Sequence record: MW760841.1
Reading direction: 5' to 3' (one strand)
Length of the DNA: 64,000 nucleotides
Shown: positions 1,378 to 18,411 of the stretch, one piece after another
Layout of the letters: every line of letters starts with the position of its first letter
Numbering within the stretch: the stretch's first letter is position 1
The notes under the pieces: model-generated
Told to the model about the DNA's origin: nothing
Database searches by the model: none
The model's input: only the letters and a program-made list of their open reading frames with translations
Position numbers and translations under genes: made by a program

Positions 1378-1388
1378 GAACTAAGCGA

Positions 1389-2276: not shown

Positions 2277-2279
2277 GTC

Positions 2280-3107
2280 ATGCTCAATTACGCTAAACCG
2301 TCAAACGAGCTAGTCTTTGACCTCATTAACCGCGACAACCCGAATTTGCCTATTAAGGTCGATGCCAGTAACTGCTACGTGGAGAAGATTACCACCGTGC
2401 CAGTGAACGCAGCTTCGAATAACCGCAATACGTCGGCGCGTTTACGTGGGGTGCAAGGCTCGGGCTTCCGTGACGCGATTACGGTGTATTACGACCGTGT
2501 CAACCTGTCCCGTTTAATGCCGTGGGGTACCGCAGTACAGACGCAGTTTGTCACCTTTGATGCACCAACCCTGCATGCGGCGTTTGCGGTGCTGCTCGAT
2601 ACGTACGGGATTAACTTCGCGGCTATCGACATCACCAACTACGCGTTGAGTGGGGTAAGTTCACCGAACTACACCAGTACGGTTAACATCAGTGCCTTGG
2701 GCACGTCTCCGGCCTACGTCGGTTCGACAGCGGCGCGCTATAGCCGTGGTCTGCCGGTACTGGACACCTCGGTGAAAGTGGATGGTCTGGATGCACTGAA
2801 AGCGCCAGTAGACCCCGCACTGAACAAGAAGTGTGTGGATATGCTGACGTACGGTATCGACTTCACGGCGTACAAAAACCTGCTGACGGTAGATGCCTCT
2901 GGTCTGCCACAGTGGGCGGGGTTACGTAAGGTACTGGATGACCTGGGTATCCCAGCATACGCGGGACCACTGAACAGTAACACCGTTCAGGACGTGGCAA
3001 CCTCCACGGCACAGTTTGCGAACAAATCGTACGACCGTGTGGTTATCCAGACCGGTATCGATGAAACCGGCATCAAGGGTGTGGCCTATTACCACTACAA
3101 CAGTTAA
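2280..3107 (+). CDS. Virion structural protein, family F (275 aa)
   Basis: NNRNT..YYDRVNL domain, TYGIDFT, YYHYNS. Confidence 0.75.
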   Translation: MLNYAKPSNELVFDLINRDNPNLPIKVDASNCYVEKITTVPVNAASNNRNTSARLRGVQGSGFRDAITVYYDRVNLSRLMPWGTAVQTQFVTFDAPTLHAAFAVLLDTYGINFAAIDITNYALSGVSSPNYTSTVNISALGTSPAYVGSTAARYSRGLPVLDTSVKVDGLDALKAPVDPALNKKCVDMLTYGIDFTAYKNLLTVDASGLPQWAGLRKVLDDLGIPAYAGPLNSNTVQDVATSTAQFANKSYDRVVIQTGIDETGIKGVAYYHYNS

Positions 3108-3158: not shown

Positions 3159-4538
3159 ATGCAATTCTATTCTAAAGCAGCATTGGAGTTGGTCTACGAC
3201 CAGGTGAACCGGGATAACCCGCAGCTGCCTGTGAAGTTGTCTCCTACCATCGCTGCCCTGACGAGTGGCCCGTCTGTAAGCTCGACAAACGGACGTAACA
3301 CAAGAGCAGTCTTTACCGGGTTTCCTGGGAGCGGCGTACAAGGGAATGTCACCCTGTACTACGATCGGGTAAACCTGGCCACCTTATTTAATTTTGTCCC
3401 GTTGGTGTATCTGCCCTCCACGGTAACAACTTATCGAGATGCGCTACCGCTGCTGAATGTGGCGTTAGGGTTAGCCTTAACGGCTGGAGACATCACGACA
3501 CCCGATGCGACACTGGCTAAATCCAGCGGTGTGCCTCAAAACGGCAAAATAACGATTGTGACATCCTGTCCGGCTTTCGCCGGGAGTCTGAGCTTTAGCT
3601 ATATGCTCAAGGGTGCAGGGTATTATCCGAACTCTGGACCGGGACCGAAGCAGTTACTGCACGGTGACTCGCTCATGGGCTACTTTGGCCGTGTATCAGA
3701 GAAGGACTTGTATACACACTCGGAACTGTTCACTTTGTTGTTGAACGGAACCGCCGCGTCGGCTGCCAGCGGAACCGAGGGCTGGTATAAGTTCTTCTGT
3801 CAGGGTGCGGTTATCTACCTACCAGTCACGCCAATGGCCAGTGGGGTGAGTTGGAGTATGTTGTACAACGCAGGCATCGTATACGGTGTGGACGGTGTGG
3901 GGAGTTACCCAATGTCACCGAGCGTGAGCCAAGCGAAAATCCTCACGAAGGATACAACCAGCGACGGACGCATTTACCTCCGGCCGAAACTCCCGACCGC
4001 CAGTAAGGCTGATCCAATGTCGACTGCCACCGGGTCACTGTCTGCTTCAGAGCTATCGGGCAGCGTACTTGACATGATGATGAAAGTGCGTGACGGTACC
4101 TGGGAAAGCAACACGTACGCAGGCTGGACGAACTGGGTGCAGATGCTCAACAGTGTTCAGGGACAGACACAAAACAACAAACTGGTGACTATGCTAGGCC
4201 AGAGTGCCGCAAACGTCAGTAAGACAACCGCTGGGGCGGGGTATTACTGGTGGCCAGTATTGGAGCTGGTTGACAAGAACGGCACCACGCTCGGCCTGGA
4301 AGAACTTCGTGCTAACGTCGATCACACGTTGCAGCCTATTACATTTACGCCCGAGTTAACGTTGCAGATTGCACCGGTTGCGTTGACTAACGCGAAAACG
4401 GTCGACTATGCACCGATACTGTTTGGCACGGATAACAGTCTCCAGATTACACCGACAATGTTTGGTTTACCGAAGACCGTGGACTTTGCACCTATCACCT
4501 TCACCGCAGAAATCTATACGCCACCCGCAGAGGGGTAA
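3159..4538 (+). CDS. Cassette 1 gene A: virion/tail-associated protein (NGRNT domain + GPGP/GYFG domain + Pro-rich tail)
   Basis: AGGAG RBS. NGRNT..YYDRVNL, SGPGPKQLLHGDSLMGYFG, WYKFFCQG, WWPVLEL. Confidence 0.75.
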   Translation: MQFYSKAALELVYDQVNRDNPQLPVKLSPTIAALTSGPSVSSTNGRNTRAVFTGFPGSGVQGNVTLYYDRVNLATLFNFVPLVYLPSTVTTYRDALPLLNVALGLALTAGDITTPDATLAKSSGVPQNGKITIVTSCPAFAGSLSFSYMLKGAGYYPNSGPGPKQLLHGDSLMGYFGRVSEKDLYTHSELFTLLLNGTAASAASGTEGWYKFFCQGAVIYLPVTPMASGVSWSMLYNAGIVYGVDGVGSYPMSPSVSQAKILTKDTTSDGRIYLRPKLPTASKADPMSTATGSLSASELSGSVLDMMMKVRDGTWESNTYAGWTNWVQMLNSVQGQTQNNKLVTMLGQSAANVSKTTAGAGYYWWPVLELVDKNGTTLGLEELRANVDHTLQPITFTPELTLQIAPVALTNAKTVDYAPILFGTDNSLQITPTMFGLPKTVDFAPITFTAEIYTPPAEG

Positions 4539-4543
4539 TTAAC

Positions 4544-5548
4544 ATGTCATTTACATTACGTTGGAAAAACCCAAACGTAATTGCGACGGTAGTGAACATC
4601 TACCGCGACACCAAGGATATTGTGGTGTCTGCGTTACCTGCCCCTATCGCGACCCTAACGAATGGGGAAACCGAATGGAAGGATAACACCGCATTACCGG
4701 GTGGGACTTACTGGTACCTGGCGACGGTTACCGCCAACGGTAAGACCGTGGCGACCTCCAGTCAGAAATACGTGATCGAAGTCAAGCGCGGGATTGGCCC
4801 GATGACCTTCCTGTACGGCGATGACCGTCTGGGGTTCTTAGGTGCCGTGCCGTACGAAGAACAATGGCAACCAGGACAAATGCCCGCGTCCTTCCTGTCG
4901 ATGTTCCCGACGCTATTGACTGACCGAGTAGCATTGTACAAGTTCTCCCGTAATGGGAAGATGCTGTATCTGCTCTCTAACGTCAGCCAGTTCCCAGGGT
5001 TTGCTAACTGGGCGTCGCTGTACCAGGCAGGTCTGGTGTATGGGACGGATGATTTTGGGCCAGTGGGTGGGCACGGTACACTGCCGGACACACTACAAAA
5101 CGCCAAGATTATTCACAATGGGGATACCTACCGCATGCGGTTGATGCGTGGTCTGTCTGGACACAAAGACCCGGCCGCGTTCCCGTTTGTGGAGGCGTAC
5201 AATCAGAAAGACCACGATGCAGTGGCGGCATTAACTGCGCCGTGTGAATTCAACGACCTGATCTATACCATGGTAAGTGAAGTACCGGTGAAACAACGTT
5301 GGGCAAACTGGAACAACCTGAGCTATACGTACGTTGGGCGTAACGACATCACGTCTGGTATCGCGTACTACACCGGCGGAACGGTGTGTATGGAACACGA
5401 TACGGCTATTGACCGTGTACTGCACCGCGCACGTTTCGATAACACCGGCGCAACGGTATCTCCCCCGGTTTCCTGCATCCAGAAAATTAACTACTGCACG
5501 GCAGCCCAGCAGGGTCGTTACTACCCCGTGTTTGAACTGGTGGAATAA
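4544..5548 (+). CDS. Cassette 1 gene B: FN3-like N-domain + GPGP/GYFG-type domain, virion protein
   Basis: MSFTLRWKNPN...IYR...W.D...Y.Y pattern; LY.AG.VYG; YYPVFEL. Confidence 0.72.
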   Translation: MSFTLRWKNPNVIATVVNIYRDTKDIVVSALPAPIATLTNGETEWKDNTALPGGTYWYLATVTANGKTVATSSQKYVIEVKRGIGPMTFLYGDDRLGFLGAVPYEEQWQPGQMPASFLSMFPTLLTDRVALYKFSRNGKMLYLLSNVSQFPGFANWASLYQAGLVYGTDDFGPVGGHGTLPDTLQNAKIIHNGDTYRMRLMRGLSGHKDPAAFPFVEAYNQKDHDAVAALTAPCEFNDLIYTMVSEVPVKQRWANWNNLSYTYVGRNDITSGIAYYTGGTVCMEHDTAIDRVLHRARFDNTGATVSPPVSCIQKINYCTAAQQGRYYPVFELVE

Positions 5549-5557
5549 GGAGCGGTC

Positions 5558-6487
5558 ATGACTATTCGTTTAAGCTGGCCGTCTCAGGTCGACAAAGCCC
5601 TTACTGGGATTGAGATTTACCGTAAGGTGGGCTGGAACGCCACCATCGATGTGTATAATCCAGGGACACCATTGGCGACCTTGGCGGGAGACGCCGTGGA
5701 GTTCGTTGAGGATGTCGCGAATCTGACCTCCAAGACGATTTACAAATACTGGGTAGCCGCCGTGAAAGGTTCTGAACGTCTGTTCAGTCAGCCGATTACA
5801 CAAGGCTTCTTCCTGGACACGGGGCCCGGCCCCCAAACCCTGAAACGTGGTGACTGGTATGCGGGGTATTTCGGCACGTTGACGAACGCTGAGTTTTTCA
5901 ACTCAACTGAAATCAAACAGCAGCTCCCTGTCGCTAAGGGTAACTTGTTCCAGTACGATCCACCGATTTGGTACAAGTTCGTTTATAAAGGCCGTATCAT
6001 TTTCGTGCCAAACAGTCGTCACGCCTCAGGCTACGCTTTTACCGATGCGTATAGTCAGGGTATGGCCTACGGCACCGAAGACAACGGACTGATTGTCCCT
6101 ACTGGCAAAAACCCCATTAAGCAGGACACCAAAATCACCAAAGATGGGCGTACCTATCGCGTACGTTTACCGTACGCGTTGGATTACGATACCGTAAGTG
6201 GCGCGACTGCCGATTACAGTAACGGCGAATGGCGCAACACGATGGGGCGTATGTTTGCGGGAGTGTCGGCAGCTTTTGCGTTACTGGGATTGGGGGCATG
6301 GGATAATCTGCCGTTACTTGGCTCAACCTCGGCCACGACCGATGCCGGGGCTGCGGCAATGGTACCAATGTACCAGGTCGGGACGACTTTGTACGCTCAA
6401 GGATATAGCACGATGGCCATCACGACTTCCAACACACCAACTGGCGCACACACGTTGTGGTTTGTGTTCGAGTTAATTTTACCGTAA
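5558..6487 (+). CDS. Cassette 1 gene C: FN3-like N-domain + GPGP/GYFG domain, virion protein
   Basis: MTIRLSW..Q; GPGPQTLKRGDWYAGYFG; WYKFVYKGRIIFVP. Confidence 0.72.
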   Translation: MTIRLSWPSQVDKALTGIEIYRKVGWNATIDVYNPGTPLATLAGDAVEFVEDVANLTSKTIYKYWVAAVKGSERLFSQPITQGFFLDTGPGPQTLKRGDWYAGYFGTLTNAEFFNSTEIKQQLPVAKGNLFQYDPPIWYKFVYKGRIIFVPNSRHASGYAFTDAYSQGMAYGTEDNGLIVPTGKNPIKQDTKITKDGRTYRVRLPYALDYDTVSGATADYSNGEWRNTMGRMFAGVSAAFALLGLGAWDNLPLLGSTSATTDAGAAAMVPMYQVGTTLYAQGYSTMAITTSNTPTGAHTLWFVFELILP

Positions 6488-6499
6488 TGGAGTAATACC

Positions 6500-7945
6500 A
6501 TGGGGTTGTATACAGAACCTTCAATGGAACTGCTCTGCCAACAAGTTGTCCGTGACAATCCCGAACTTGCAGGACGTATTACCGCTGACTCCATTGGGGT
6601 CAGGGGTTTACCGATTGCGAAAGCTGCGAAAGGACGAAACACGCAAATCACGTTGGTAGGAAAGCCCGGTAAAGGATTTGCCGGGGAACTGCTGGTCTAT
6701 TACGACCGGTTGGCGTTAACGGTCTTGTTCCGCGCACCAATAACTTTATACGTGCCGAAGTCGGCTACGAAAGTACAAGACTTGCTGCCGTATATCCGTG
6801 AAGTTTATGGTCTCCAGTTGGAGCCAAGCGACATCGTTAATGCGACTGCTGCATTGAGCCCATTAGCCACGTTGACTAACCTAACACTGACAGTGTCGGC
6901 CAGTTGTCCTTGTTACACCGGTACATTCACCGTCAGTTATGCTGCTCAACCTTACGGGTATTATCCGAAGAGTGGCCCAGGCAGTAAACAGTTACTCGCT
7001 GGGAATGAGTTGTACGGCTATTTCGGCAAAGTGTCTCAGGCGGAATTCGCCACCAGTGCTGAGCTGTGGCTCACGGCATTCCCTGGAATGGCTAATGGCA
7101 CGATTCCCCAAACGGGTTACGTGTGGCACAAATTCTTTATGAACGGTACCGTGGTCTATTTGCCTGACCGTGGGGTGGGTTTAACGTCATGGGCTTCACT
7201 GTACGCCGCTGGGGCGGTCTATGGTGACGGTACGACGGGCACACCTCCACCGGGGCCAGACCCGACTACCCAAACGCTGTATTACAGCAAAACCGAAAAC
7301 GGCGAAACCTCGTTCTTCAGTCTCCGTATTCCGGTAGATGGCAGTCGTGACCCAAATACGGGCTTTGGCCTGATGGCCAAACTCGGTGACGGTACTACTG
7401 GCGGGGAGTGGGGTAACGACACCACCATTCAGTTCGGTGACCAGGTCATTCTGAATACGCTGAATGCGTCCAAGAACCTGGTCGGGAACATGAAGGGGAC
7501 AGGTGGGGCATGGATTGACAGTTGGACGAACTCACAGTGGTGGCCAATCGTTGAGATGCTTGACAAGTCCTCGATGGTCGTACCGTTAGCGGATATCGAA
7601 GGGGTATTAACCTGGACCTGTCGTCCTGTGGTGTTCGACACCGCGTCAAGCACCGACGGCCTCTTCCCTATCGCGATAGAAGCGGGGACAACCCCATTAC
7701 CGAAACCAATGCCGGGCGTTGCGGATACGACCACGATTCTCGTGTTCCCAATTGGTATCGAATCGCCGACTGTTGCGGTTCCACTGCCAATGATCGCCGA
7801 GAGCGACCAAATCGGCCATGCTGCACCAATCGCGTTGATGTCACCGCACGTCGACAAACCACGGCCATTAGTGGCCACCTCTGGTAACGAATTAATAAAA
7901 ATGAATATTGCGACCACCGACGGTGAGTTGGATGGTTTTCGATAA
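6500..7945 (+). CDS. Cassette 2 gene A
   Basis: MGLY.., KGRNT, SGPGSKQLLAGNELYGYFG, WWPIVEM, C-terminal DGELDGFR. Confidence 0.75.
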   Translation: MGLYTEPSMELLCQQVVRDNPELAGRITADSIGVRGLPIAKAAKGRNTQITLVGKPGKGFAGELLVYYDRLALTVLFRAPITLYVPKSATKVQDLLPYIREVYGLQLEPSDIVNATAALSPLATLTNLTLTVSASCPCYTGTFTVSYAAQPYGYYPKSGPGSKQLLAGNELYGYFGKVSQAEFATSAELWLTAFPGMANGTIPQTGYVWHKFFMNGTVVYLPDRGVGLTSWASLYAAGAVYGDGTTGTPPPGPDPTTQTLYYSKTENGETSFFSLRIPVDGSRDPNTGFGLMAKLGDGTTGGEWGNDTTIQFGDQVILNTLNASKNLVGNMKGTGGAWIDSWTNSQWWPIVEMLDKSSMVVPLADIEGVLTWTCRPVVFDTASSTDGLFPIAIEAGTTPLPKPMPGVADTTTILVFPIGIESPTVAVPLPMIAESDQIGHAAPIALMSPHVDKPRPLVATSGNELIKMNIATTDGELDGFR

Positions 7946-7955
7946 GGAGTAAGTG

Positions 7956-8954
7956 ATGTCTTTTACACTACGTTGGAAAAACGATAACCCAGCAGGGTCA
8001 GTGGTAAAAGTGTATCGCGGGACCGCCAAGTTAAACCCGACGGCCCTACCTGCACCACTAGCAACACTCTCAAACGGTGAAGAAACCTGGACAGATACCA
8101 CGGTTCTGCTGAACACCGGCTATTACTACCTACTGACCGTCACGGTGAATGACCGTACTGCGGCTGGCCCGCAGAAATACATCGTGGTGAAAAACCGCCG
8201 TGGTGTCGGTAGCGTTGATCAGATTAACATGTTTGACACCGATGACTTGGCTTTTTTAGGCTCGATGGATTTCACTGAGCAGTGGAGTGCCGATGACTTC
8301 CCTGCGGGATTTCGTGCGCTCGTTGGTGTCAGTGGACCTGCCCAACTCTCATTCCATAAGTTCTCGCAGAACGGGCGCATGAAATACATGTTCCCGAACG
8401 GGGGGCGCTACTACAACAAACTGTTCAGTTGGAACGACATTTATAACGCCGGTCTGATGTACGGTGTGGACGGCCCTGGGCCTGAAAACGGTCGGGGTAA
8501 TTTAGCCCCCGTCGACCAGAACGGTTTGTTCGACTTCCAAGGCGATACCTATCGGATGCGTTGCTTACGCGGACTAACGTTACCTAACGAATCAACGGTC
8601 ATGACGTTACCCGACGCGTGGCACGGGGTAACCATGACGTCCATTGGTAAGGGACGTTGCGAATACAATGACCTTGTATATCCGTACAACGAATTCATCC
8701 CTGAGTCTCAGCCGATACCGAATTGGTATCAGTTGCAGAATTACCAAATGTTCAGTAGCGGGGGCGTATTCACAGGCACCGGGTACCTGTGTCAAGAACG
8801 CGATCCGGTTTCCGGTAAAGTGGTCTCCCGTGGGTCTACCCCATCGGGTAACGGCGCATCGTTGCAAATCAAAGCCGATTTGGAGATGATTAAGCTGGTT
8901 GACCCTGCGGTGGCCAATGGGGTGTTTGTTCCAGTGATTGAATTAATGGAGTAA
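7956..8954 (+). CDS. Cassette 2 gene B
   Basis: AAGGAG RBS, MSFTLRWKNDN; paralogue of 4544..5548. Confidence 0.72.
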   Translation: MSFTLRWKNDNPAGSVVKVYRGTAKLNPTALPAPLATLSNGEETWTDTTVLLNTGYYYLLTVTVNDRTAAGPQKYIVVKNRRGVGSVDQINMFDTDDLAFLGSMDFTEQWSADDFPAGFRALVGVSGPAQLSFHKFSQNGRMKYMFPNGGRYYNKLFSWNDIYNAGLMYGVDGPGPENGRGNLAPVDQNGLFDFQGDTYRMRCLRGLTLPNESTVMTLPDAWHGVTMTSIGKGRCEYNDLVYPYNEFIPESQPIPNWYQLQNYQMFSSGGVFTGTGYLCQERDPVSGKVVSRGSTPSGNGASLQIKADLEMIKLVDPAVANGVFVPVIELME

Positions 8955-8957
8955 GTT

Positions 8958-9863
8958 ATGTCAATTGTATTGAGTTGGAAACCACAACCGGGACAAACAC
9001 TCGACGCGGTAGAAATCTACCGTTATGCCGCACCTCGTGGTACCGTGAATCCGAACAGTCCGGGTACGCCACTGGCTATCCTACCGGGTAATGCCACCAC
9101 CTACGAAGACACAACCGTCACGGCGAACACAACGTACCAATACCGCATCATGTCAGTGAAAGGTTCGGATAAGGTCATGGGCTTCCCGATTATCCAGGCG
9201 GACTTCACGTACACTGGTCCTGGGCCCCAGAAACTGATTCGTGGGGATTGGTGGTGCGGTTATTTCGGCACTTTACCCAATACCGATTTCATCCTGAACT
9301 TTTCGGAGTTGAACGGTCTTATTGGTTTCAGTGCCTGGAACAACAGCCCGCTGATTTACCACAAGTTCGTCTTTAAAGGTCGCATTCTGTTTATCCCGGA
9401 TACGTGTACCCGCAACGGCACTACTTGGGAAGATCAATACCGGCAAGGACTGATGTGGGGCACCGACGATGTCGGAAACTCGCCGTACGGCATGTCTCAA
9501 AACGTTAATCAACGTAAGACGGTAGCCAAAAATGGTTTCGAATACGTCGTGCGTTTACCACGGTTAGGCGACTATAACCAAGTCCACAATGTGAACATGG
9601 GTTCGTTTAATTTTTATAGCGAGGGCGAATGGTTAAACACCTTCGGCCGACTGGTACGCTATAACGGCGCGCTGAAACGTTTTTCGGATTACGATTTACG
9701 GGCTGGAACGAATTACCCCGACGTGACCGCGACGTGGTTTGCAAATGGTTACAATTCGCAATTGCCGTGGTTTTATCGCGCGAGCACACCAGAATCGCCA
9801 ACGTACACCAACCAAAACGTGAGTGGCGTCGCCTTCCATGTTTTAGAGTTGGTTCTTAACTAG
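8958..9863 (+). CDS. Cassette 2 gene C
   Basis: MSIVLSWKPQ; GPGPQKLIRGDWWCGYFG; HKFVFKGRILFIP. Confidence 0.72.
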   Translation: MSIVLSWKPQPGQTLDAVEIYRYAAPRGTVNPNSPGTPLAILPGNATTYEDTTVTANTTYQYRIMSVKGSDKVMGFPIIQADFTYTGPGPQKLIRGDWWCGYFGTLPNTDFILNFSELNGLIGFSAWNNSPLIYHKFVFKGRILFIPDTCTRNGTTWEDQYRQGLMWGTDDVGNSPYGMSQNVNQRKTVAKNGFEYVVRLPRLGDYNQVHNVNMGSFNFYSEGEWLNTFGRLVRYNGALKRFSDYDLRAGTNYPDVTATWFANGYNSQLPWFYRASTPESPTYTNQNVSGVAFHVLELVLN

Positions 9864-9874
9864 CAGGAGACCAC

Positions 9875-11272
9875 ATGGGGTTATACAGCCAACCGCCGTT
9901 AGAGTTACTCTGTCGGCTCATTATGCGTGATAATCCCCAACTCGCAATACCCCTCGACCCTACCAAGGTCATGGTGTTAAGCGGACCTTTGACAACCGGA
10001 CTCGGGACTAGCGGGCGTAACACCCGCGTTATCCTGAACGGGAAGACGGGGTCGGGGATTGTAGGCAAGAAAGAATTCTTCTACGACCGTATCAAACTCA
10101 GCTCATTGTTCAACGGTATCACCGTGGTCTTTGATGCTGCGGGTGGGGCGGCGAAGGTGTCTGACCTCTTGCCTGCATTAAACGAACAATACGGGATTCA
10201 ATTGTCCCCCGCTGACTTGAGCAACGGTGACACTGTCCTGGGCTACGCGTACACGCCTACGCCTGTGACGTTCAACATTGCGACAACCAGCCTTGCCTAC
10301 TCAGGTACTTTGACAGCCACATGGCGACGTTTGCCCGTGGGTACGTTCCCCGAATCCGGTCCCGGTTCGAAGGTGATGTTAATCGGTGATTTGAACGAAG
10401 GTTACTTCGGTCGAGTAACAGCAGCCGAGATGATGACGCAAGGTGAGTTCTTTAGCAACTACTTTGCTGACCATCCGCGTAACACAGCTGCCCCGATTAT
10501 CGACCCGGCGTTGTATTGGCTCAAGTTTGCCTTAGACGGCAAGTTTGTGTTTGTGCCAAGCCACAGCCTGATTGCTAACATCACCTGGGATCAGATTAAC
10601 GCGAATGGCAATGCGGACGGCAGTGCGCCGTTCCCACTGCTGTTGAAGAAAGGGACTGATAACCACTTCTTCAATATTCGCTTGCCGCGTTTCTCGACCA
10701 CCTATGAGATTGCCCCAGGGCGCAGTGACCCGACGGGTGACAACAACCGGCTGTTTGCGAAGGTACACAAGCAGGCGTACGGCACCGGCGTCTGGGACGC
10801 GGTGACACTGTTGGATTTCACGTCTGACTTTGTCTGGTGGAACCGACGTAGTGATATGCCTACGGTCGAACAGCGATTTATATCGCAGTTTACCACCAGT
10901 GGCGTGTCGTCACAGTTATCGAACGTGAACGCTAACTGGCGTCCCGTCTTTACGTTGGTGGATGGTAAACTTATCCTGATGCCAGTGAACAGCGTTACAG
11001 GTGTGCCCACAGGACGCATCAAAGCCCCTGTGCTGACGATTGACCGTGAACCTGACCCGTTACAACCGAAACGAGTAACGGACGTCACAGGGACGCTTCT
11101 ACGCGCTTTCCCGAAACCGCGCTTGCAGCCAATCGAACTGTATGTGGTTTTACCTGTCAGTAAAATCGTGCCGATTAATACCATCAAACGTTTCCCTGTT
11201 AACATTACGGTCACCTTCGATGCTCGCTTCCCGTTAGCTGCGGCTAATGGCGAGTTAGATGGTTTTCGTTAG
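9875..11272 (+). CDS. Cassette 3 gene A
   Basis: MGLYS, SGRNT, GPGSKVMLIGDLNEGYFG, WRPVF, C-terminal NGELDGFR. Confidence 0.75.
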   Translation: MGLYSQPPLELLCRLIMRDNPQLAIPLDPTKVMVLSGPLTTGLGTSGRNTRVILNGKTGSGIVGKKEFFYDRIKLSSLFNGITVVFDAAGGAAKVSDLLPALNEQYGIQLSPADLSNGDTVLGYAYTPTPVTFNIATTSLAYSGTLTATWRRLPVGTFPESGPGSKVMLIGDLNEGYFGRVTAAEMMTQGEFFSNYFADHPRNTAAPIIDPALYWLKFALDGKFVFVPSHSLIANITWDQINANGNADGSAPFPLLLKKGTDNHFFNIRLPRFSTTYEIAPGRSDPTGDNNRLFAKVHKQAYGTGVWDAVTLLDFTSDFVWWNRRSDMPTVEQRFISQFTTSGVSSQLSNVNANWRPVFTLVDGKLILMPVNSVTGVPTGRIKAPVLTIDREPDPLQPKRVTDVTGTLLRAFPKPRLQPIELYVVLPVSKIVPINTIKRFPVNITVTFDARFPLAAANGELDGFR

Positions 11273-11282
11273 GAGCTAGTCT

Positions 11283-12320
11283 ATGTCTTTAAAACTTACT
11301 TGGGCTAACCCCAACGTGGTGGCCAACAGTGTGGCCATTTATCGGGGTGATGCTGAATTAAACACCGCAGCATTACCGACGCCGTTAGTTGTGTTAACCG
11401 GTGGGGAAACTACCTGGACGGACCTTACTGCCGATTTCGGGAAAACCTATTACTACGTTCTCGGCACACGGACGCAGTACGACGAAGTGTTTACTGCTAA
11501 CCAGAAAATTCTGGTTGTGGATAACCGGGGTGCGGGGCCGAGTGTATTGAAATACGGTGACGATAACCTGGGTTACTACGGTTCAGTGCTGGGGGCAGAC
11601 TTCGTGGGTTACGGTGACTTCCAAGCCGTTGCAGCAGTAGCAATGTCTAACTTAGCGTGGTCCCCATCCTGGCACAAGTTCGTGCGTAACGGGAAGATCA
11701 TTTACGTACCAGACAGTGTGCCGCCGGACTTTTGGACGTGGCAGCAAATCTATCAGTTCGGGTTTATGTACGGCATCGATGCGAACTACCCGCCGGGCTT
11801 AACCTTCACCGGTCTAACGGCGACCAACCAAAATCGTATCATTGATTTCAAAGGACAGAAATACCGCGTCCGTACCATTCGCGGCTGGAGTGATGATCCG
11901 CTTAGTCAATTCGTCTCGACGGTTGTCACTAACAATGAAAGTGATGCAGCCGCCGTGCTAATAAAGAACAACGAGTTCAGTGACTTCATTTATGCCTTAA
12001 TGGCGTACGTGCCACTGAAACAGCGTACTGAGAACTACGCCGAAAATCCCGATCCGGGCACATACGTGGGGGTAGCGTATAACGCTGGGTTTAACTCCGA
12101 TAACCAGACGCTGGAGATGAACCGTGGACGCGTGTTATGTCAAGAGCGTGACCCTGGCGCGGTCACTGCAAGTATGCTGACTCGCGGTTTACGAGCGACG
12201 GGTTATTCCTCGGTTCCCGGTTGGAACAAAGCAAACCTGACGTATATTCAAAACCGACCCGTGAATACGCAGGCGCGTTGGCTCCCGGTGTTAGAACTCA
12301 TTGATAGCGTTGTTCTTTAA
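11283..12320 (+). CDS. Cassette 3 gene B
   Basis: MSLKLTWANPN; GAGPSVLKYGDDNLGYYG; WHKFVRNGKIIYVP; WLPVLEL. Confidence 0.72.
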   Translation: MSLKLTWANPNVVANSVAIYRGDAELNTAALPTPLVVLTGGETTWTDLTADFGKTYYYVLGTRTQYDEVFTANQKILVVDNRGAGPSVLKYGDDNLGYYGSVLGADFVGYGDFQAVAAVAMSNLAWSPSWHKFVRNGKIIYVPDSVPPDFWTWQQIYQFGFMYGIDANYPPGLTFTGLTATNQNRIIDFKGQKYRVRTIRGWSDDPLSQFVSTVVTNNESDAAAVLIKNNEFSDFIYALMAYVPLKQRTENYAENPDPGTYVGVAYNAGFNSDNQTLEMNRGRVLCQERDPGAVTASMLTRGLRATGYSSVPGWNKANLTYIQNRPVNTQARWLPVLELIDSVVL

Positions 12321-12329
12321 GGAATCATT

Positions 12330-13214
12330 ATGGGCGTTAAATTAAAATGGGATTTGCAAGTTACCCAGAATCTGGATGCCATTGAAATCTATCGGAGCAA
12401 CAACCCCATCGATTTCGCTAATCCTGGCACCCCATTGGTGACACTGGCCGGGACGGCAACCGAGTTCGAAGACTTCACCGTCAAGAACAAGAACCTCTAT
12501 TATTACCGCATCGCGGCTAAGAAAGGAGCAGAACGCGGTTGGGGTGAAAACCAATTAACCGGTTACTTCTCAGAAACTGGGCCAGGACGTGCCTATCCGC
12601 TACGTGGGGATTGGAACGCGGGGTTAATGGATATCCTCCCGCAGGCGAACCTTATCACCATGCCGGACTTCTTTGCGAAGCTGCCACAGTTAAGTAAATT
12701 CGGCGGCGTATCCGCAGGTATTACTAGCTGGTACAAAACCTGTTACAAAGGTAAGGTCATCTTTGTGCCGAGTGGTCCAGTGCTGACGGCGTCCTGGAGC
12801 GAGCTGTACGGGGCGAAGGCTATCTTCGGTGAAGACAGTTCGGTGCAGTTACCGAACGGTACCTTAGCCAGCGGTAAGCTGACCGTTGACATCAACGGTC
12901 TGACGTACATCGTGCGTTGTCCGAAACTGTCACCACTTCCCTACTCTACGTACCTAACGACACAAGACCAAACCCTCAACAGTGAGTGGCGTGATACTGT
13001 GTCGCGTTTGTGTCTGCTGTCCACCGAACCACAACCGGGAGCTAAGTCACGTCTGTTTGACTTGGGCGCAGCACCGGCGACGGTATTGGGTGGCCACATT
13101 CAAACTACCGTTAACTGTTCGGCGATATTGCCTGCTGCACCGGGTGCTTTATCTTACGGTGCGATGGCCAGTCGCTATGCCGTCGGGCTTGTGCTCGAAC
13201 TCGTTATGCCTTAA
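12330..13214 (+). CDS. Cassette 3 gene C
   Basis: MGVKLKWDLQ; GPGRAYPLRGDWNAG; YKGKVIFVP. Confidence 0.72.
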   Translation: MGVKLKWDLQVTQNLDAIEIYRSNNPIDFANPGTPLVTLAGTATEFEDFTVKNKNLYYYRIAAKKGAERGWGENQLTGYFSETGPGRAYPLRGDWNAGLMDILPQANLITMPDFFAKLPQLSKFGGVSAGITSWYKTCYKGKVIFVPSGPVLTASWSELYGAKAIFGEDSSVQLPNGTLASGKLTVDINGLTYIVRCPKLSPLPYSTYLTTQDQTLNSEWRDTVSRLCLLSTEPQPGAKSRLFDLGAAPATVLGGHIQTTVNCSAILPAAPGALSYGAMASRYAVGLVLELVMP

Positions 13215-13225
13215 AGGAGAAAAAC

Positions 13226-14752
13226 ATGGGGCTTTACAGCAAGAAGTCACTGGAGCTACTGTGCCAGTTAATCGAGCGGGATAATCCCCAGTTCACCAAT
13301 CCTCTTGATGCGCAAAGCATCATGGTGTTGAGTGGTCCACTCACATCCGGTTTAGGCTCCAGCGGGCGCAATGCCCGCATTATTCTCAACGGTCGTACCG
13401 GGACAGGTATCGTGGGGAAAAAGGAGTTCTTTTATGACCGCATTAACTTAACGCGGTTGTTTAACGGCATCACTGTCGTTTTCGATGCAGCTGGAAGTTC
13501 GAAGACATATGCAGATTTGCTCCCTGCGCTCAATGAGCAATACGGGATGGCTTTAGAGGCAGCAGACCTCAGCAACGGAACCACTAAACTTCCGTTCGGC
13601 TATACCCCAACACAGGTGACACTTAACATCGCTACTACCTCGGTGGGCTACACCGGTAGTTTAAGTGTGACTTGGACACGTAAGCCCGTAGGTGTGTATC
13701 CGGACTCTGGGCCGGGTACGAAGGTATTGTTGATTGGTTCGATTGAAGAGGAAGGGTACTTCGGTACTGTCTCCGAAGCTGAACTGTTCGGTGCCCCGGC
13801 AATCGTATCGAAAATCAACGAAGGAATGGCGAGCCCCGCAGGGACATTGACGGCTATCCCCGCTACCCGACTGTGGTATAAGTTTGCGCGAGATGGGAAG
13901 ATTCTGTACCTCGCCAACTATAACCAAATCACCATCAAGTGGCAAGAGCTGTATGTCCGTGGTGCAGCCTATGAAACTGACCAACACGAAGACAAGCAGT
14001 TCCCGACGGACGGTGTGTTCGTTGCCCAACGTCCGGTTATCCGGAAGATGGAGAATGGACGTGCCTGGTATCTGTCGCCGTGTATGCCACGCTTGGCAGA
14101 ATCAGACCCGTGGGATTATCAGGCGGTTAACCAGACTCCTGACCCAACCGGTGATGTTGCCCGGTTGTTTGCCAAGATTGTAGCAAGCGGTGGGTTTGCC
14201 ACCGGGGAGTGGGACGGGCAGAGTATCGACGCCACTGGCTTCTGGTTCTCCACGACGTCGATGAAAGAACCTGCGAAAGCCTTCGGGAGTAGCATGACCG
14301 GCATCCAGCAAAACATGTACGACAAAGCGACCTACAATGGTGGCTGGCGTCCGATGCTGGAACTGGCTGATTTGGATAAAATCGCTATTCCGTTGGAAGA
14401 GTTCATTGGGGAACCCGATGGGGTGTTGCGTAAACCACGGTTTACCATCAGTCCAGATACCGGCGAAGTGTTGCTGATTGTCAGTGATGTCGCCTGGGAA
14501 ATCTCGGGTGCGTTGGATAAGCCACTGATTGACATGGTTCTCGAACCTCCGTTGAATACGAAGGAAATCAGTTGGGAACGTGACCTGCCAACCCCACTGA
14601 TGCAAGTCGTCTCTGAACCCCTGTTATCAGTGAACACCTACGGTTGGAAAAAACTATTGCGAGCACCCGTGACCCGGATTACGTCCGAGTACAAGGAAGT
14701 GGTGGCCTACGACCTGAGAACGGCCGATGGCGAACTCGATGGCTTTAAATAA
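13226..14752 (+). CDS. Cassette 4 gene A
   Basis: MGLYS, SGRNA, GPGTKVLLIG..EEGYFG, WRPMLEL, C-terminal DGELDGFK. Confidence 0.75.
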   Translation: MGLYSKKSLELLCQLIERDNPQFTNPLDAQSIMVLSGPLTSGLGSSGRNARIILNGRTGTGIVGKKEFFYDRINLTRLFNGITVVFDAAGSSKTYADLLPALNEQYGMALEAADLSNGTTKLPFGYTPTQVTLNIATTSVGYTGSLSVTWTRKPVGVYPDSGPGTKVLLIGSIEEEGYFGTVSEAELFGAPAIVSKINEGMASPAGTLTAIPATRLWYKFARDGKILYLANYNQITIKWQELYVRGAAYETDQHEDKQFPTDGVFVAQRPVIRKMENGRAWYLSPCMPRLAESDPWDYQAVNQTPDPTGDVARLFAKIVASGGFATGEWDGQSIDATGFWFSTTSMKEPAKAFGSSMTGIQQNMYDKATYNGGWRPMLELADLDKIAIPLEEFIGEPDGVLRKPRFTISPDTGEVLLIVSDVAWEISGALDKPLIDMVLEPPLNTKEISWERDLPTPLMQVVSEPLLSVNTYGWKKLLRAPVTRITSEYKEVVAYDLRTADGELDGFK

Positions 14753-14764
14753 GAGGACTTAAAC

Positions 14765-15748
14765 ATGGCCTTAAAACTTAAATGGAAAAACCCCAATAAA
14801 GGCGCAACCACGGTTGACATTTATCGGGGCGATACCGCGAATGTGGATTTAACCACACCGCTCGTTTCTCTATTGGCCGGAGAGCTTGAGTGGATTGATA
14901 CCACGGCTCTCTTTGGCAAGACTTATTACTACGTGTGGGCTGTTAACACCGCCAATGACCGCGTAGTCAGTCGTCCTCAGAAAATCGAAGTGAACGACCG
15001 TCAGGGCCCAGGCCCGAATCTGCTGATGCACGGTTCAGAATCTTACGGATACTTTGGTACCGTACCGTCGGCGGATTTCGTCAACAGTTCTGCTATCTTC
15101 GCGGCCCTGAAATCGATGTCGGGTATCCCAAACAACATCATCTACCCAACGTGGCATAAGTTTATCCGCAACGGTAAAGTGTTATTCGTACCGGATAACC
15201 GCATTGGGGATGTGACCTGGAACAACCTGTACGCGGCGGGTGCGGTCTATGGCACCAACGACAACGGCCCGTCCAACAGTCCGGGGAACGTCAACCAGTT
15301 GTGTACGTTTGAACTCAACGGTGACTTGTTCCTGGTGCGTGCACCGAAAGCTGTCCCCGATGGCATGGTGTGGGACAACACTGCGGTCGACCTTGACACC
15401 TTACCGGCGGCGAAGGATATCTATTCTGAATACGAAGACATCTTCTTCCCGCTGATCGCCTTCACCCCTTTACGTCAGCGTATGGTGAACGTCGCAGAGA
15501 TGAACCCACAGTCGATTCTACCTACGGGTAGTGGTAACGATCGTACCAGCATCGGTGTGTGTTGTCAGGAAGTGGCAAGCGCAACTGCCGCAGCACAGCG
15601 TGGGATCGGGTCTTACAACTGGGCCAGCAGCAGTAGCCGCGACCAGGTGCGTAACTTCTCACTTCGTGGGCGTACTTCGGCGAACGTTTGGTGGCCAATT
15701 GTGGAGTATATCGGCCGTGTGGGTGAAGTTGACCTGGCACACATTTGA
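14765..15748 (+). CDS. Cassette 4 gene B
   Basis: MALKLKWKNPN; GPGPNLLMHG..SYGYFG; WHKFIRNGKVLFVP; WWPIVEY. Confidence 0.72.
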   Translation: MALKLKWKNPNKGATTVDIYRGDTANVDLTTPLVSLLAGELEWIDTTALFGKTYYYVWAVNTANDRVVSRPQKIEVNDRQGPGPNLLMHGSESYGYFGTVPSADFVNSSAIFAALKSMSGIPNNIIYPTWHKFIRNGKVLFVPDNRIGDVTWNNLYAAGAVYGTNDNGPSNSPGNVNQLCTFELNGDLFLVRAPKAVPDGMVWDNTAVDLDTLPAAKDIYSEYEDIFFPLIAFTPLRQRMVNVAEMNPQSILPTGSGNDRTSIGVCCQEVASATAAAQRGIGSYNWASSSSRDQVRNFSLRGRTSANVWWPIVEYIGRVGEVDLAHI

Positions 15749-15757
15749 GGATAAGTC

Positions 15758-16660
15758 ATGGGTATTACAATCAAGTGGGACAGCCAGGCTGACCAAAATC
15801 TGGATGCGATTGAAGTGTATCGCTCCACCTCGCGGATTGATGAAAACAATCCCGGTACGCCAATTGCAACACTGGCAGCCACAGCGACAGAATACGTGGA
15901 CAACAATGTTCGTGTAGGCAACACGTATTACTACAGCGTGGCGGTAGTGAAGGGTGCCAACCGTTCGTTCGGCGCTAACCAAACTCAGGGGTATTACTCT
16001 AACCTGGGGCCAGGCCCACAAAAGGTTATTCGTGGGGACTGGGTACGGGGTTACTTCGGTGAAATGACACCGGCTGAGTGGGTGACACCGGTCGATGTGG
16101 CGAACAAGATTAAAGATCAGTTGAAGAGTGTGGTGGGGATGTCTTTCGCTACCTCTACCAGCGGAACCTGGTTCAAGTTCGTTTATAAAGGTAAGATCAT
16201 CCTGGTGAACACCACCGCTTTGGTGAGTGCGACCAACTGGACGAACATGTATAACGCAGGCTTCATCTACGGAACCGATGACTTCGGTAAAACCCCGACA
16301 GGTGATGCAGGGGCGGTTAACCAGCGTTGCGTTATCGAAGTGGGTGGTTATCAGTTCCTGGTGCGTGGTGTACGCATGAGCGATAAACCGTTTACTGAGT
16401 ACATCACTACGCAGGAAGACTTCAACAAAAGCGAATGGAAGAGCACGTATGCCCGTCTGAAATCGGACAGTGCCGCTCTGACTGACCCAACCATTCTCCC
16501 GCGCTTCAACGATAACGGGACATCCTTAGCCTCGGTGAGTGCCCATGCGTTTGATGCCACCAACCAGGTGAGTATTGCCGCAGCGACGCCTGAGGTACTT
16601 GGGAAAGCCGCGAAGACCGGTACCCAGCCAGTGTTGGTTGTGCTCGAACTGTTGCAATAA
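15758..16660 (+). CDS. Cassette 4 gene C
   Basis: MGITIKWDSQ; GPGPQKVIRGDWVRGYFG; WFKFVYKGKIILV. Confidence 0.72.
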   Translation: MGITIKWDSQADQNLDAIEVYRSTSRIDENNPGTPIATLAATATEYVDNNVRVGNTYYYSVAVVKGANRSFGANQTQGYYSNLGPGPQKVIRGDWVRGYFGEMTPAEWVTPVDVANKIKDQLKSVVGMSFATSTSGTWFKFVYKGKIILVNTTALVSATNWTNMYNAGFIYGTDDFGKTPTGDAGAVNQRCVIEVGGYQFLVRGVRMSDKPFTEYITTQEDFNKSEWKSTYARLKSDSAALTDPTILPRFNDNGTSLASVSAHAFDATNQVSIAAATPEVLGKAAKTGTQPVLVVLELLQ

Positions 16661-17294: not shown

Positions 17295-17822
17295 ATGGCT
17301 ATTGTTTCCGCACAAGCGCAACTTGTTGCCCTGTTCAATACTAAAAACTCCGGCCTGGCGCAAGCTCTGGCGGTGGCTGATGTCGATTTCGGCGCAGTTG
17401 CCGAACTGACCGGCGGCAGCGAAGGTCGTAACAGTAAAGTCACCATCACGGCGAAAGCGGGTTCTACCCATTTCTCCGGTGAGAAAGAGCTGCACTATAT
17501 CCGTCTCGCAGCGGGCATTGTTGGTGCGAAAGCAGTGACTGCGGATCTGGCAGACTGGGATACTGATGATGAAGTCATCGCATTCCTGAATGCCGACGTT
17601 ATCACGGCTGGTAAAACCGAAGATGCGTTCGTGGCTTCCGAGCTGACTATCAGCCGTAGCGGCGCAGGTACCGATGAAGACCCACAAGTGATTGTTGTTG
17701 CTATCAAAGATGGCCACATTAAATACCTGGCGGGTACTGTCGCGACCTACACCGTGACGCAGGAAATCGTGAAGACTGACCTTGCCAGCACCAACGGTGA
17801 GCTGGATGGCTTCACCGCCTAA
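17295..17822 (+). CDS. Short virion protein (EGRNS domain + NGELDGF tail)
   Basis: GAGG RBS. GRNS..LHYIRL domain; ends NGELDGFTA. Confidence 0.72.
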   Translation: MAIVSAQAQLVALFNTKNSGLAQALAVADVDFGAVAELTGGSEGRNSKVTITAKAGSTHFSGEKELHYIRLAAGIVGAKAVTADLADWDTDDEVIAFLNADVITAGKTEDAFVASELTISRSGAGTDEDPQVIVVAIKDGHIKYLAGTVATYTVTQEIVKTDLASTNGELDGFTA

Positions 17823-17836
17823 GTAATGCTGTAATC

Positions 17837-17858: not shown

Positions 17859-17891
17859 TTTATTTTTTCTTAAAACATGGAAGATACAATT

Positions 17892-18395: not shown

Positions 18396-18411
18396 CCTCT
18401 GGAGATGTTAA

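What the first reader, a model, noticed from the sequence alone, without database searches (positions are those of the whole stretch)
3159..16660. Four tandem copies of an ordered three-gene A-B-C cassette (13.5 kb)
Seen: the order A (NGRNT domain, 459-508 aa), B (..L.W.NPN/NDN, about 327-345 aa), C (..W..Q, 294-309 aa) repeats exactly four times. All 12 proteins carry a related GPGP..L..GD...GYFG...W.KF..GK..FVP...LY..G..YG domain. N-terminal domains are conserved (A3 and A4 share GIVGKKEFFYDRI.L..LFNGITVVFDAAG with many synonymous changes), while the C-terminal thirds are highly divergent. Inference: a heteromeric A/B/C appendage made in four versions, giving a stored repertoire of receptor-binding modules.
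Basis: partly seen in the sequence, partly recalled or inferred. Interest (0 to 1): 0.75.

Follow-up and report, generated by a model that had tools for sequence, protein, structure and literature searches.

The report
Four three-gene virion-protein cassettes, jumbo phage
The block really is four old tandem copies of a three-gene unit, but it belongs to an already described giant family of virion proteins of phiKZ-like jumbo phages (SPN3US "paralog family B", DUF7941), and its claimed role as a stored receptor-binding repertoire is not shown.

Summary
Observation confirmed. Twelve co-oriented genes at 3159-16660 form A-B-C four times. The window is 100% identical to Erwinia jumbo phages pEa_SNUABM_4 and pEa_SNUABM_8 (Machinavirus).

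A has the N-terminal half of DUF7941, a ~220-aa module I call M (no Pfam or PDB match), and a disordered tail. In A2-A4 the tail ends in a GELDGF-type peptide. B and C are an Fn3-like domain plus M.

The A, B and C trees are congruent, each ((1,2),(3,4)), so the triplet duplicated as a unit. Ten related phages carry one to four whole cassettes, always in A-B-C order. Distant chimalliviruses keep similar units: PhiEaH1 has two triplets, Noxifer one M-first gene plus three Fn3-M genes. Others fuse M-M-M in one chain.

The array is orthologous to SPN3US gp145-153, part of the published 17-member family gp138-154. All nine are low-copy virion proteins in roughly equal amounts. They co-purify with tailless heads, not tails.

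The A N-domain structurally matches a phiKZ outer-baseplate chain, probably gp127.

Best reading: adaptor A joins DUF7941 chains and carries B and C as a three-M unit, with four unit types displayed together. Receptor binding, and "stored" in particular, are unsupported.

New member of a known kind; interest moderate.

The parts
1..465 (+). 3' part of a full-length DUF7941 gene (4th of 7 in the phage; cut by the window start). Ortholog of SPN3US gp141.
   Evidence: Pfam PF25613 E 2e-32, profile positions 163-276. Annotated gene pEaSNUABM8_00164.
538..1377 (+). Full-length DUF7941 gene (5th of 7), 279 aa
   Evidence: PF25613 E 2e-77, full profile; phrog_1037.
1353..2276 (+). Full-length DUF7941 gene (6th of 7). 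The annotated start is at 1389 (295 aa).
   Evidence: PF25613 E 4e-81; annotation.
2280..3107 (+). Full-length DUF7941 gene (7th of 7), 275 aa
   Evidence: PF25613 E 2e-88.
3159..4538 (+). A1 (type 1), 459 aa. DUF7941 N domain 1-150, module M about 157-373, disordered tail. It is 13 aa shorter than its ChrisDB ortholog and lacks the terminal GELDGF-type peptide. The ORF is intact.
   Evidence: AF2 pLDDT 79.6, tail below 50.
4544..5548 (+). B1, 334 aa. Fn3-like domain 1-79, M 81-334.
5558..6487 (+). C1, 309 aa. Fn3-like domain 1-83, M 87-308.
   Evidence: AF2 pLDDT 95.2, pTM 0.91. Fn3 Foldseek matches.
6500..7945 (+). A2 (type 2), 481 aa. Ends in the GELDGF-type peptide.
7953..8954 (+). B2, 333 aa from the GTG start (annotated ATG at 7956 gives 332 aa)
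8958..9863 (+). C2, 301 aa
9875..11272 (+). A3 (type 3), 465 aa. Ends in the GELDGF-type peptide.
   Evidence: An HMM built only from the upstream DUF7941 genes hits residues 1-151.
11283..12320 (+). B3, 345 aa
12330..13214 (+). C3, 294 aa
13226..14752 (+). A4 (type 4), 508 aa. Ends in the GELDGF-type peptide.
14765..15748 (+). B4, 327 aa
15758..16660 (+). C4, 300 aa
16674..16699 (.). 11-bp GC-rich hairpin between C4 and the convergent gene 16707-17177. Terminator-like on both strands. It marks the end of the co-oriented block.
17295..17822 (+). S1, 175 aa. DUF7941 N-domain-only paralog ending in the GELDGF-type peptide. Ortholog of the abundant SPN3US gp160.
   Evidence: PF25613 E 4e-8; motif; orthology.
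17877..18395 (+). S2, 172 aa (annotated start 17892). N-domain-only paralog with the same terminal peptide.
   Evidence: PF25613 E 7e-6, 26.3 bits, just below the 27-bit cut-off. 35% identical to S1. Motif.
18412..18927 (+). S3, 171 aa. N-domain-only paralog with a related terminal peptide.
   Evidence: PF25613 E 7e-9.

Best explanation
The block is four ancient tandem duplicates of a three-gene unit. It belongs to the chimallivirus-specific DUF7941 / SPN3US 'paralog family B' system of virion proteins.

Domain make-up (shown):
- A has the DUF7941 N-terminal domain, a ~220-aa uncharacterised module (M), and a disordered tail.
- In A2-A4 the tail ends in a GELDGF-type peptide. The three small N-domain-only paralogs just downstream end the same way. 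In an alignment this peptide lines up with the LDGL..P motif that opens the linker of full-length DUF7941 proteins.
- B and C are an Fn3-like domain plus M.

Also shown: duplication as a unit, orthology to SPN3US gp145-153, and, from the literature, that those orthologs are low-copy virion proteins in roughly equal amounts.

Inferred mechanism:
- The abundant full-length and N-domain-only paralogs form head-to-tail chains, as reported for Goslar gp22 and predicted for gp23. The linker peptide of one subunit docks on the N domain of the next.
- A enters such chains, or their anchor, through the same acceptor-domain and donor-peptide contacts.
- A recruits B and C through M-M contacts, giving a low-copy unit of three M modules.
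- The four cassettes give four kinds of unit that are displayed together, not switched.
- The fast-evolving second half of M is the likely outward-facing or ligand-facing part, perhaps for weak adhesion to surface polymers.

Where on the virion this sits is unresolved. SPN3US orthologs stay with tailless heads, whereas the solved phiKZ relative of the N domain sits on the outer baseplate.
For: - Identity of the window: 100% match to pEa_SNUABM_4 and pEa_SNUABM_8.
- Architecture: PF25613 covers residues 1-150 of A1 and A2, profile positions 1-151 of 276. An HMM built only from the upstream DUF7941 genes hits residues 1-151 of A3 and A4, and the M HMM hits all 12 proteins.
- AF2 models: A1 pLDDT 79.6 with a disordered tail. 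C1 pLDDT 95.2, pTM 0.91.
- The A1 N domain matches PDB 9xqd chain 0, phiKZ outer peripheral baseplate (E 5e-5, probability 1.0, TM 0.66). PMC13250141 places gp127 there.
- The Fn3 fold of the B and C N domains is supported.
- Unit duplication: the A, B and C trees are congruent, each ((1,2),(3,4)), with the same phages in each type. The M tree groups by position.
- Whole-cassette presence or absence, one to four per genome.
- PhiEaH1 has two [M+tail, Fn3-M, Fn3-M] triplets. Noxifer has one M+tail gene followed by three Fn3-M genes.
- Single chains carrying M-M-M, Fn3-M-M-M, or Kelch plus four M exist elsewhere.
- Terminal peptide: present in A2-A4, in most A orthologs, and in S1-S3. It aligns with the LDGL motif of full-length DUF7941. 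The S1 tail matches the A2 tail (BLASTP E 3e-4).
- S1 is the ortholog of the abundant SPN3US gp160, paralleling Goslar gp23, which is an N domain plus linker.
- Goslar gp22 forms filaments. Head-to-tail docking of the linker on the N domain is predicted there.
- SPN3US mass spectrometry: gp145-153 are all detected. PSM per kDa is 1.2-4.5, against 3.9 for the portal and 95 for the capsid protein. They are not among the eight protease-processed head proteins named in the 2017 paper (a later paper counts nine, unnamed in what I read).
- Strong purifying selection on old duplicates: 21 of 27 identical residues use different codons, and there are no long DNA repeats.
Against: - No multimer prediction or contact data were available, so the A-B-C contacts and the peptide-to-domain docking are inferences.
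- A profile-profile comparison of the A tails alone with the DUF7941 profile gave no signal. The link rests on the short motif and on the S proteins.
- B and C have neither the N domain nor the peptide.
- A1 in this phage, and in Machina, lacks the peptide.
- M has no recognisable binding fold.
- The location evidence conflicts. The head/wild-type ratio of 1.06-1.67 in SPN3US tailless particles equals that of capsid and portal proteins. phiKZ gp127 is on the baseplate, and the Goslar 'baseplate fibre cloud' model is speculative and shows no density for these proteins.
- B is about twice as abundant as A or C in two of the three SPN3US cassettes.
- The single CR5 cassette has mixed type affinities.
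Confidence: 0.5

Rival explanations
1. Each cassette builds a heteromeric tail appendage, and the four versions are alternative receptor-binding modules that set host range.
For: - The N-to-C divergence gradient peaks in the second half of M.
- Cassette content differs between related phages.
- The array lies about 10 kb from four large paralogous virion genes equivalent to the SPN3US tail-fibre candidates gp168-170.
- In PhiEaH1 and Noxifer the equivalent genes directly follow a long annotated tail-fibre gene.
- The N domain matches a phiKZ baseplate chain.
- Some Goslar DUF7941 proteins carry carbohydrate-binding or hydrolase domains.
Against: - The SPN3US orthologs remain with tailless heads at capsid-like ratios, while all tail and fibre proteins fall to 0.07 or below.
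- No beta-helix, collar, lectin or other known receptor-binding fold was found.
- Cassette types do not follow the host. Type 1 occurs in both Erwinia and Salmonella phages, and Erwinia amylovora phages carry two, three or four cassettes.
- There is no switching machinery for a 'stored' repertoire.
Confidence: 0.2
2. The proteins are head components proper, as published for SPN3US. They would be external capsid or neck decorations or fibres, with no link to the baseplate. The cassettes would provide varied Fn3-bearing surface decoration, Hoc-like in spirit.
For: - Two independent tailless mutants of SPN3US retain the whole family.
- Retention ratios are tight and capsid-like after two CsCl gradients.
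- B and C carry Fn3-like domains. Ig-like and Fn3-like domains are common on phage surface decoration proteins (my own knowledge).
- They are not among the eight protease-processed head proteins named in the 2017 SPN3US paper.
Against: - The high-resolution phiKZ and Goslar capsid models do not assign DUF7941 proteins to the capsid.
- The only solved relative of the N domain is in the baseplate.
- One small family member, SPN3US gp237, is tail-associated.
- Self-assembling filaments, as seen for Goslar gp22, could be attached elsewhere or could co-purify.
Confidence: 0.2
3. They are internal head proteins, packaged with the DNA and ejected into the host.
For: They are assigned to the head in SPN3US. 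Chimalliviruses package many proteins.
Against: - The cassette proteins are not listed among the protease-processed head proteins, unlike the major ejection proteins gp53 and gp54.
- The Fn3 plus beta-rich modular architecture with a flexible tail is typical of external proteins.
- The N-domain relative lies outside the particle, on the baseplate.
- Purified Goslar gp22 forms long filaments.
Confidence: 0.05

Closest known systems
Salmonella phage SPN3US 'paralog family B' (gp138-gp154 plus gp83, gp160/161 and gp237; Thomas et al. 2016, PMC5105663; 2017, PMC5694885; 2023, PMC10052503)
   Same: The array is orthologous and syntenic. Seven DUF7941 genes are followed by A-B-C cassettes, and gp145-153 correspond to three cassettes. 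S1 is the ortholog of gp160. All are virion proteins by mass spectrometry.
   Different: This phage and ChrisDB have four cassettes (types 1-2-3-4). SPN3US has three (1-2-2') plus two further genes. In what I read, those papers treat the family as one flat paralog set. They do not describe the three-gene unit, the M module or the terminal peptide.
DUF7941 filament proteins of Goslar (gp22, gp23) and phiKZ (gp126, gp127) (bioRxiv 10.64898/2026.04.21.720040; PMC13250141; PDB 9xqd)
   Same: A carries the same N-terminal domain, shown by Pfam and by Foldseek to 9xqd chain 0. S1-S3 resemble gp23, which is an N domain plus linker.
   Different: A has M and a tail in place of the DUF7941 C-terminal domain. 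B and C have no DUF7941 part at all. The extra domains reported in Goslar are carbohydrate-binding, hydrolase or LRR domains. Whether any of them equals M was not tested.
Phages carrying several adhesins at once on adaptor proteins, such as the multi-tailspike phages CBA120 and G7C/phi92 types (named from my own knowledge, not tested here)
   Same: Several paralogous surface modules would be displayed together, joined by dedicated docking domains.
   Different: No trimeric beta-helix or known tailspike fold is present. The orthologs co-purify with heads, not tails.
phiKZ gp131-135 / SPN3US paralog family C (hetero-oligomeric tail-fibre base)
   Same: This is another paralog family of the same phages that builds a heteromeric fibre from related subunits. 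Its genes lie nearby in the window at 25973-40125.
   Different: The sequences and folds are unrelated, and that family is clearly tail-associated in SPN3US.

Membership tests
Pfam DUF7941 (PF25613) | Match to the profile above the 27-bit gathering score | tested here: met
   A1 scores 98 bits and A2 101 bits, but over profile positions 1-151 of 276 only. A3 and A4 are hit at residues 1-151 by an HMM built from the upstream full-length genes. They were not scanned against Pfam itself.
Pfam DUF7941 (PF25613) | The same match in B and C | tested here: not met
   PF25613 does not hit B1, B2, C1 or C2. B and C join the family only through the M module they share with A.
Pfam DUF7941 (PF25613) | Full architecture: N domain, linker, C-terminal domain | tested here: not met
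   A lacks the C-terminal domain, and M plus a tail follow the N domain. The upstream genes at 538-3107 have the full architecture.
SPN3US paralog family B | Orthology and synteny with gp138-gp154 | tested here: met
   The gene order is the same. Types 1 and 2 cluster with SPN3US A, B and C genes with 80-100% bootstrap support. A1 is 49% and C1 57-58% identical to the SPN3US-group orthologs.
SPN3US paralog family B | Presence in purified virions | not testable with these tools
   Shown by mass spectrometry for SPN3US orthologs only. I found no proteome for pEa_SNUABM_4 or pEa_SNUABM_8.
DUF7941 head-to-tail filaments (Goslar gp22 type) | Linker or peptide of one subunit docks on the N domain of the next; filaments are seen by EM | not testable with these tools
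   Only single-chain prediction was available. Indirect evidence: the terminal peptide of A2-A4 and S1-S3 aligns with the LDGL motif at the start of the linker. hhalign of the tails alone gave no signal.
Phage receptor-binding proteins (tail fibres, tailspikes) | A recognised receptor-binding or depolymerase fold | tested here: not met
   No Pfam family matches M. There is no PDB match by profile or by Foldseek beyond the N domain and Fn3.
Phage receptor-binding proteins (tail fibres, tailspikes) | Location on the tail or baseplate | tested here: inconclusive
   The N domain matches a phiKZ baseplate chain. Yet the SPN3US orthologs stay with tailless heads.
Fibronectin type III domain | Fn3 fold in the B and C N-termini | tested here: met
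   The C1 model matches Fn3 scaffolds (probability 1.0, TM about 0.6). The B/C profile hits the Fn3 domain of pectate lyase 4u49 (E 9e-4). Pfam fn3 itself stays below its cut-off (13-15 bits against 25).
Switchable or stored cassette systems (invertible tail-fibre segments, shufflons, diversity-generating retroelements) | Near-identical repeats or inverted repeats flanking the cassettes, silent copies, and a recombinase or reverse transcriptase | tested here: not met
   The longest direct repeats are 20-69 nt at 60-88% identity inside coding motifs. Inverted repeats are 30 nt or shorter and imperfect. All 12 genes are complete and co-oriented. A dedicated recombinase or reverse-transcriptase search was not run on every neighbouring gene.

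The most novel reading that the evidence does not exclude
The A/B/C triplet is an ancient three-module 'knob'. It plugs into DUF7941 chains by a donor-peptide and acceptor-domain contact. Gain and loss of whole cassettes give chimalliviruses a combinatorial set of adhesins carried on a filament system attached to the head or neck rather than the tail. That would be a host-contact organelle of a kind not described for other phages.
Probability: 0.15. Interest if true: 0.8.

Novelty: new member of a known kind. Interest (0 to 1): 0.45.

Why it matters
[quoted passage not shown] Ten years after its discovery its function and even its location are unsettled. SPN3US proteomics says head, while the phiKZ structure and the Goslar model say baseplate filaments.

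Three features found here turn a flat list of 20-odd paralogs into a testable assembly model:
- about half of the family is organised as a conserved three-gene unit that duplicates and is lost as a whole;
- one member of each unit carries the filament N domain;
- a shared terminal peptide links the A proteins to the most abundant small subunits.

The work also defines an uncharacterised ~220-aa module. A profile search finds 407 cluster representatives at E ≤ 1e-30 that carry it, and no Pfam or solved relative.

Tried and rejected
- A sequence-profile search of the A alignment against the PDB gave only a chance hit.
- Foldseek of both models against the PDB found nothing for M. A weak match to CRLF3 (Fn3 plus SPRY; probability 0.35-0.75, TM 0.22) was judged not meaningful.
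- BFVD returned only chimallivirus 'virion structural proteins'.
- Pfam at E ≤ 10 on the 12 M segments found nothing.
- hhalign of the A tails against the DUF7941 profile gave no signal.
- dN/dS between this phage and ChrisDB is uninformative, because synonymous sites are saturated (dS above 1 or undefined).
- The sigma-70 promoter scan was not above shuffled expectation.
- A recent-duplication or gene-conversion origin was rejected, because there are no long DNA repeats.
- The 'glycosyl hydrolase' name given to the Proteus phage 7 ortholog of C1 has no support in the Pfam scan or the fold search.
- The single CR5 cassette does not fit one type: A is nearest type 4, and B and C are nearest type 3. 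I did not resolve whether this reflects recombination or descent from the unduplicated 3/4 ancestor.

The protein family I had in mind is the Pfam 'Phage tail collar' domain, as in T4 gp12, and no tool returned it as a hit.

Full report
IDENTITY OF THE WINDOW. The region 3159-16660 is 100% identical to Erwinia amylovora jumbo phages pEa_SNUABM_4 and pEa_SNUABM_8 (249 kb, Machinavirus). It is 76% identical over about half its length to phage ChrisDB. Only short stretches match SPN3US-like Salmonella phages at the DNA level. In both exact records the 12 genes are annotated only as hypothetical or 'putative virion structural protein'.

THE OBSERVATION. All-against-all BLASTP shows that each protein's best matches are the proteins in the same position of the other cassettes. 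A-A identity is 29-42% (E down to 5e-108), B-B is 29-35%, and C-C is 31-40%. Cross-position matches are weaker. The quoted motifs are present. The A3/A4 stretch is 27/30 aa identical but only 62/90 nt identical, and 21 identical residues use different codons. So the copies are old and under strong purifying selection. There are no long DNA repeats between cassettes.

ANATOMY.
- Pfam finds the first half of DUF7941 (PF25613, profile positions 1-151 of 276) at residues 1-150 of A1 and A2. An HMM built only from the upstream full-length DUF7941 genes finds the same domain in A3 and A4.
- Residues ~157-375 of A and ~81 to the end of B and C share a ~220-aa module that I call M.
- The first ~80 residues of B and C are Fn3-like. 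The B/C profile hits the Fn3 domain of pectate lyase 4u49 (E 9e-4), and the C1 model matches Fn3 scaffolds in Foldseek.
- AlphaFold2 models were A1 (pLDDT 79.6, last ~80 residues below 50) and C1 (pLDDT 95.2, pTM 0.91).
- M has no Pfam family, no PDB relative by profile, and no Foldseek match. BFVD matches are all chimallivirus virion proteins.
- The A1 N domain matches chain 0 of PDB 9xqd, the phiKZ outer peripheral baseplate (E 5e-5, probability 1.0, TM 0.66). The phiKZ paper places the DUF7941 protein gp127 there, capping a band of gp139 dimers (PMC13250141). That chain 0 is gp127 is my inference from its size and context.

A SHARED TERMINAL PEPTIDE. A2, A3 and A4, and most A orthologs in the other phages, end in a conserved GEL[DNS]GF peptide at the tip of the disordered tail. 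A1 here, and A1 of Machina, are shorter and lack it. Three small genes just downstream (S1-S3, 17295-18927) are DUF7941 N-domain-only proteins that end in the same peptide. The S1 tail matches the A2 tail (E 3e-4). When S1-S3 are aligned with the seven full-length DUF7941 proteins of the phage, this peptide lines up with the LDGL..P motif that follows the N domain and opens the linker. A direct profile comparison of the A tails alone gave no signal, so this link is suggestive and not proven.

EVOLUTION.
- Neighbour-joining trees of A, B and C from eight phages are congruent. Each gives four orthologous types arranged ((1,2),(3,4)), with the same phages in each type.
- A tree of the M modules groups them by position (A, B, C) and not by cassette.
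- Hence an A-B-C triplet existed first and duplicated as a unit, at least twice, before these genera diverged.
- Content differs by whole cassettes, always in the same order:
  - pEa_SNUABM_8 and ChrisDB: 1-2-3-4
  - Machina and Stratton: 1-3-4
  - Phobos: 1-2-4
  - SPN3US: 1-2-2'
  - pSal-SNUABM-04: 1-3
  - EarlPhillipIV: 3-4
  - Wellington: 1 plus a divergent type
  - CR5: a single cassette with mixed affinities
.
- In the distant Iapetusvirus PhiEaH1 the pattern [M+tail, Fn3-M, Fn3-M] occurs twice. In Noxifer, one [M+tail] gene is followed by three Fn3-M genes. In both, the genes directly follow a long annotated tail-fibre gene, and the first protein lacks the DUF7941 N domain.
- A profile search of 1.84 billion representatives finds 407 relatives at E ≤ 1e-30. 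These include single chains with M-M-M, Fn3-M-M-M, Kelch plus four M, and eight M segments. One M-M-M protein lies on a contig that also encodes the phage multisubunit RNA polymerase.
- Never-broken triplets together with fused forms are the classical signature of parts that work together physically.

WHAT IS ALREADY KNOWN.
[quoted passage not shown] It was later named paralog family B (PMC5694885).
- By length, mass and order, gp145-153 are three A-B-C cassettes.
- All nine are detected in purified virions. From Table S2 of PMC10052503 I calculate PSM per kDa of 1.2/1.2/1.6, 3.5/4.5/1.7 and 1.7/3.6/2.0 for A/B/C of the three cassettes. The portal (12 copies) gives 3.9, the capsid protein 95, gp141 gives 23, and gp160 gives 32. 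So the cassette proteins are low-copy and roughly equimolar, while two backbone-type paralogs are abundant.
- S1 is the ortholog of gp160.
- In tailless particles purified on two CsCl gradients the cassette proteins are retained at head/wild-type ratios of 1.06-1.67. The capsid protein gives 1.39 and the portal 1.40. Tail, baseplate and fibre proteins fall to 0.07 or below, and one small family member, gp237, behaves as a tail protein.
- The Goslar preprint shows that purified gp22 (full-length DUF7941) forms long filaments. It predicts head-to-tail docking of the linker on the next N domain, also for gp23 (N domain plus linker). It proposes a baseplate-anchored 'fibre cloud', but it sees no density for these proteins.
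- In the papers I read I found no description of the three-gene unit, the M module or the terminal peptide.

MOST LIKELY MECHANISM. The architecture, unit duplication, orthology and virion presence of orthologs are shown. The rest is inferred. Abundant full-length and N-domain-only paralogs make head-to-tail chains. A joins them through the same N domain and donor peptide and carries B and C through M-M contacts, giving low-copy three-M units. The four cassettes give four unit types present together. The fast-evolving second half of M would be the exposed or ligand-facing face. Among paralogs it is 23-25% identical, and between this phage and ChrisDB it falls as low as 42-67% while the Fn3 domains stay at 73-93%. 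Location is open. The SPN3US data favour attachment to the head or neck, and the phiKZ structure shows at least one N-domain protein on the baseplate.

The idea of a heteromeric unit in four versions fits the evidence. 'Stored repertoire' does not: there is no switching machinery, the genes are complete and tightly packed (gaps 3-12 nt), a terminator-like hairpin follows C4, and all orthologs are in the virion at once. 'Receptor-binding' is untested and has no fold support. A tail location is contradicted by the best available proteomics on orthologs.

LIMITS. No multimer modelling was possible. The trees are neighbour-joining with 60-100 bootstraps. Spectral counts are rough. I found no proteome for this phage itself. 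One slip is declared under 'tried and rejected'.

VERDICT. This is a real, ordinary-by-origin but biologically unresolved feature. It is a new member, and with ChrisDB the largest cassette set seen here, of a known chimallivirus virion-protein family. Its internal three-gene logic appears not to have been spelled out before.

Noticed in passing
window 17295-18927: Three tandem ~172-aa genes (S1-S3) are DUF7941 N-domain-only paralogs that share the terminal GELDGF-type peptide with A2-A4. S1 is the ortholog of the very abundant SPN3US gp160.
   Followed up: yes
window 25973-40125 (- strand): Four paralogous large virion-protein genes (401, 1698, 1364 and 1233 aa) share N-terminal PHROG matches. 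The three large ones are the counterparts of SPN3US gp168-170 (paralog family C, tail-fibre or baseplate candidates related to phiKZ gp131).
   Followed up: partly
window 21711-23946 (- strand): Two adjacent radical-SAM genes sit between the lysis/'tail assembly chaperone' genes and the fibre genes. They are conserved in all relatives examined. Their role in a structural region is unexplained.
   Followed up: no
L004 8815-10617; L006 7901-9706; L007 8830-10647; L011 6683-8581: An annotated EPS depolymerase gene lies directly upstream of the DUF7941 array in Machina, pSal-SNUABM-04, Stratton and Wellington. It is absent at that place in pEa_SNUABM_8, ChrisDB, SPN3US, Phobos, EarlPhillipIV and CR5. 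There is no simple relation to cassette number.
   Followed up: partly
window 3159-4538; L004 16876-18249: A1 of this phage and of Machina is about 13 aa shorter than the other type-1 orthologs and lacks the terminal peptide. The ORF is intact, and B1 starts 6 nt after the stop. If the peptide is a donor element, these A1 proteins could only accept, not donate.
   Followed up: partly
L012 14001-17474 (Cronobacter phage CR5): The single cassette has A nearest type 4 but B and C nearest type 3. This could reflect recombination or descent from the unduplicated 3/4 ancestor.
   Followed up: no
L003 17989-21500; L005 12495-15982; L012 10496-13989: Two further genes (439 aa and ~720 aa) with DUF7941 N-domain matches accompany the array in SPN3US, Phobos and CR5. 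They lie after the cassettes in SPN3US and before them in Phobos and CR5. They are absent from this window. The Phobos 719-aa protein also ends in a GELAGF peptide.
   Followed up: partly
window 50001-54000: There is a local rise in GC skew (0.10-0.15), coinciding with an 836-aa SbcC-like gene at 50601-53111.
   Followed up: no
window 18924-18975: A 24-nt imperfect hairpin lies immediately after S3. It is a possible terminator closing the small-paralog block.
   Followed up: no
P0103 (L010 50-3823): A metagenomic protein joins an N-terminal Kelch beta-propeller to four M modules. Phage EL has a Kelch-annotated protein that matches the A1 model in BFVD.
   Followed up: partly
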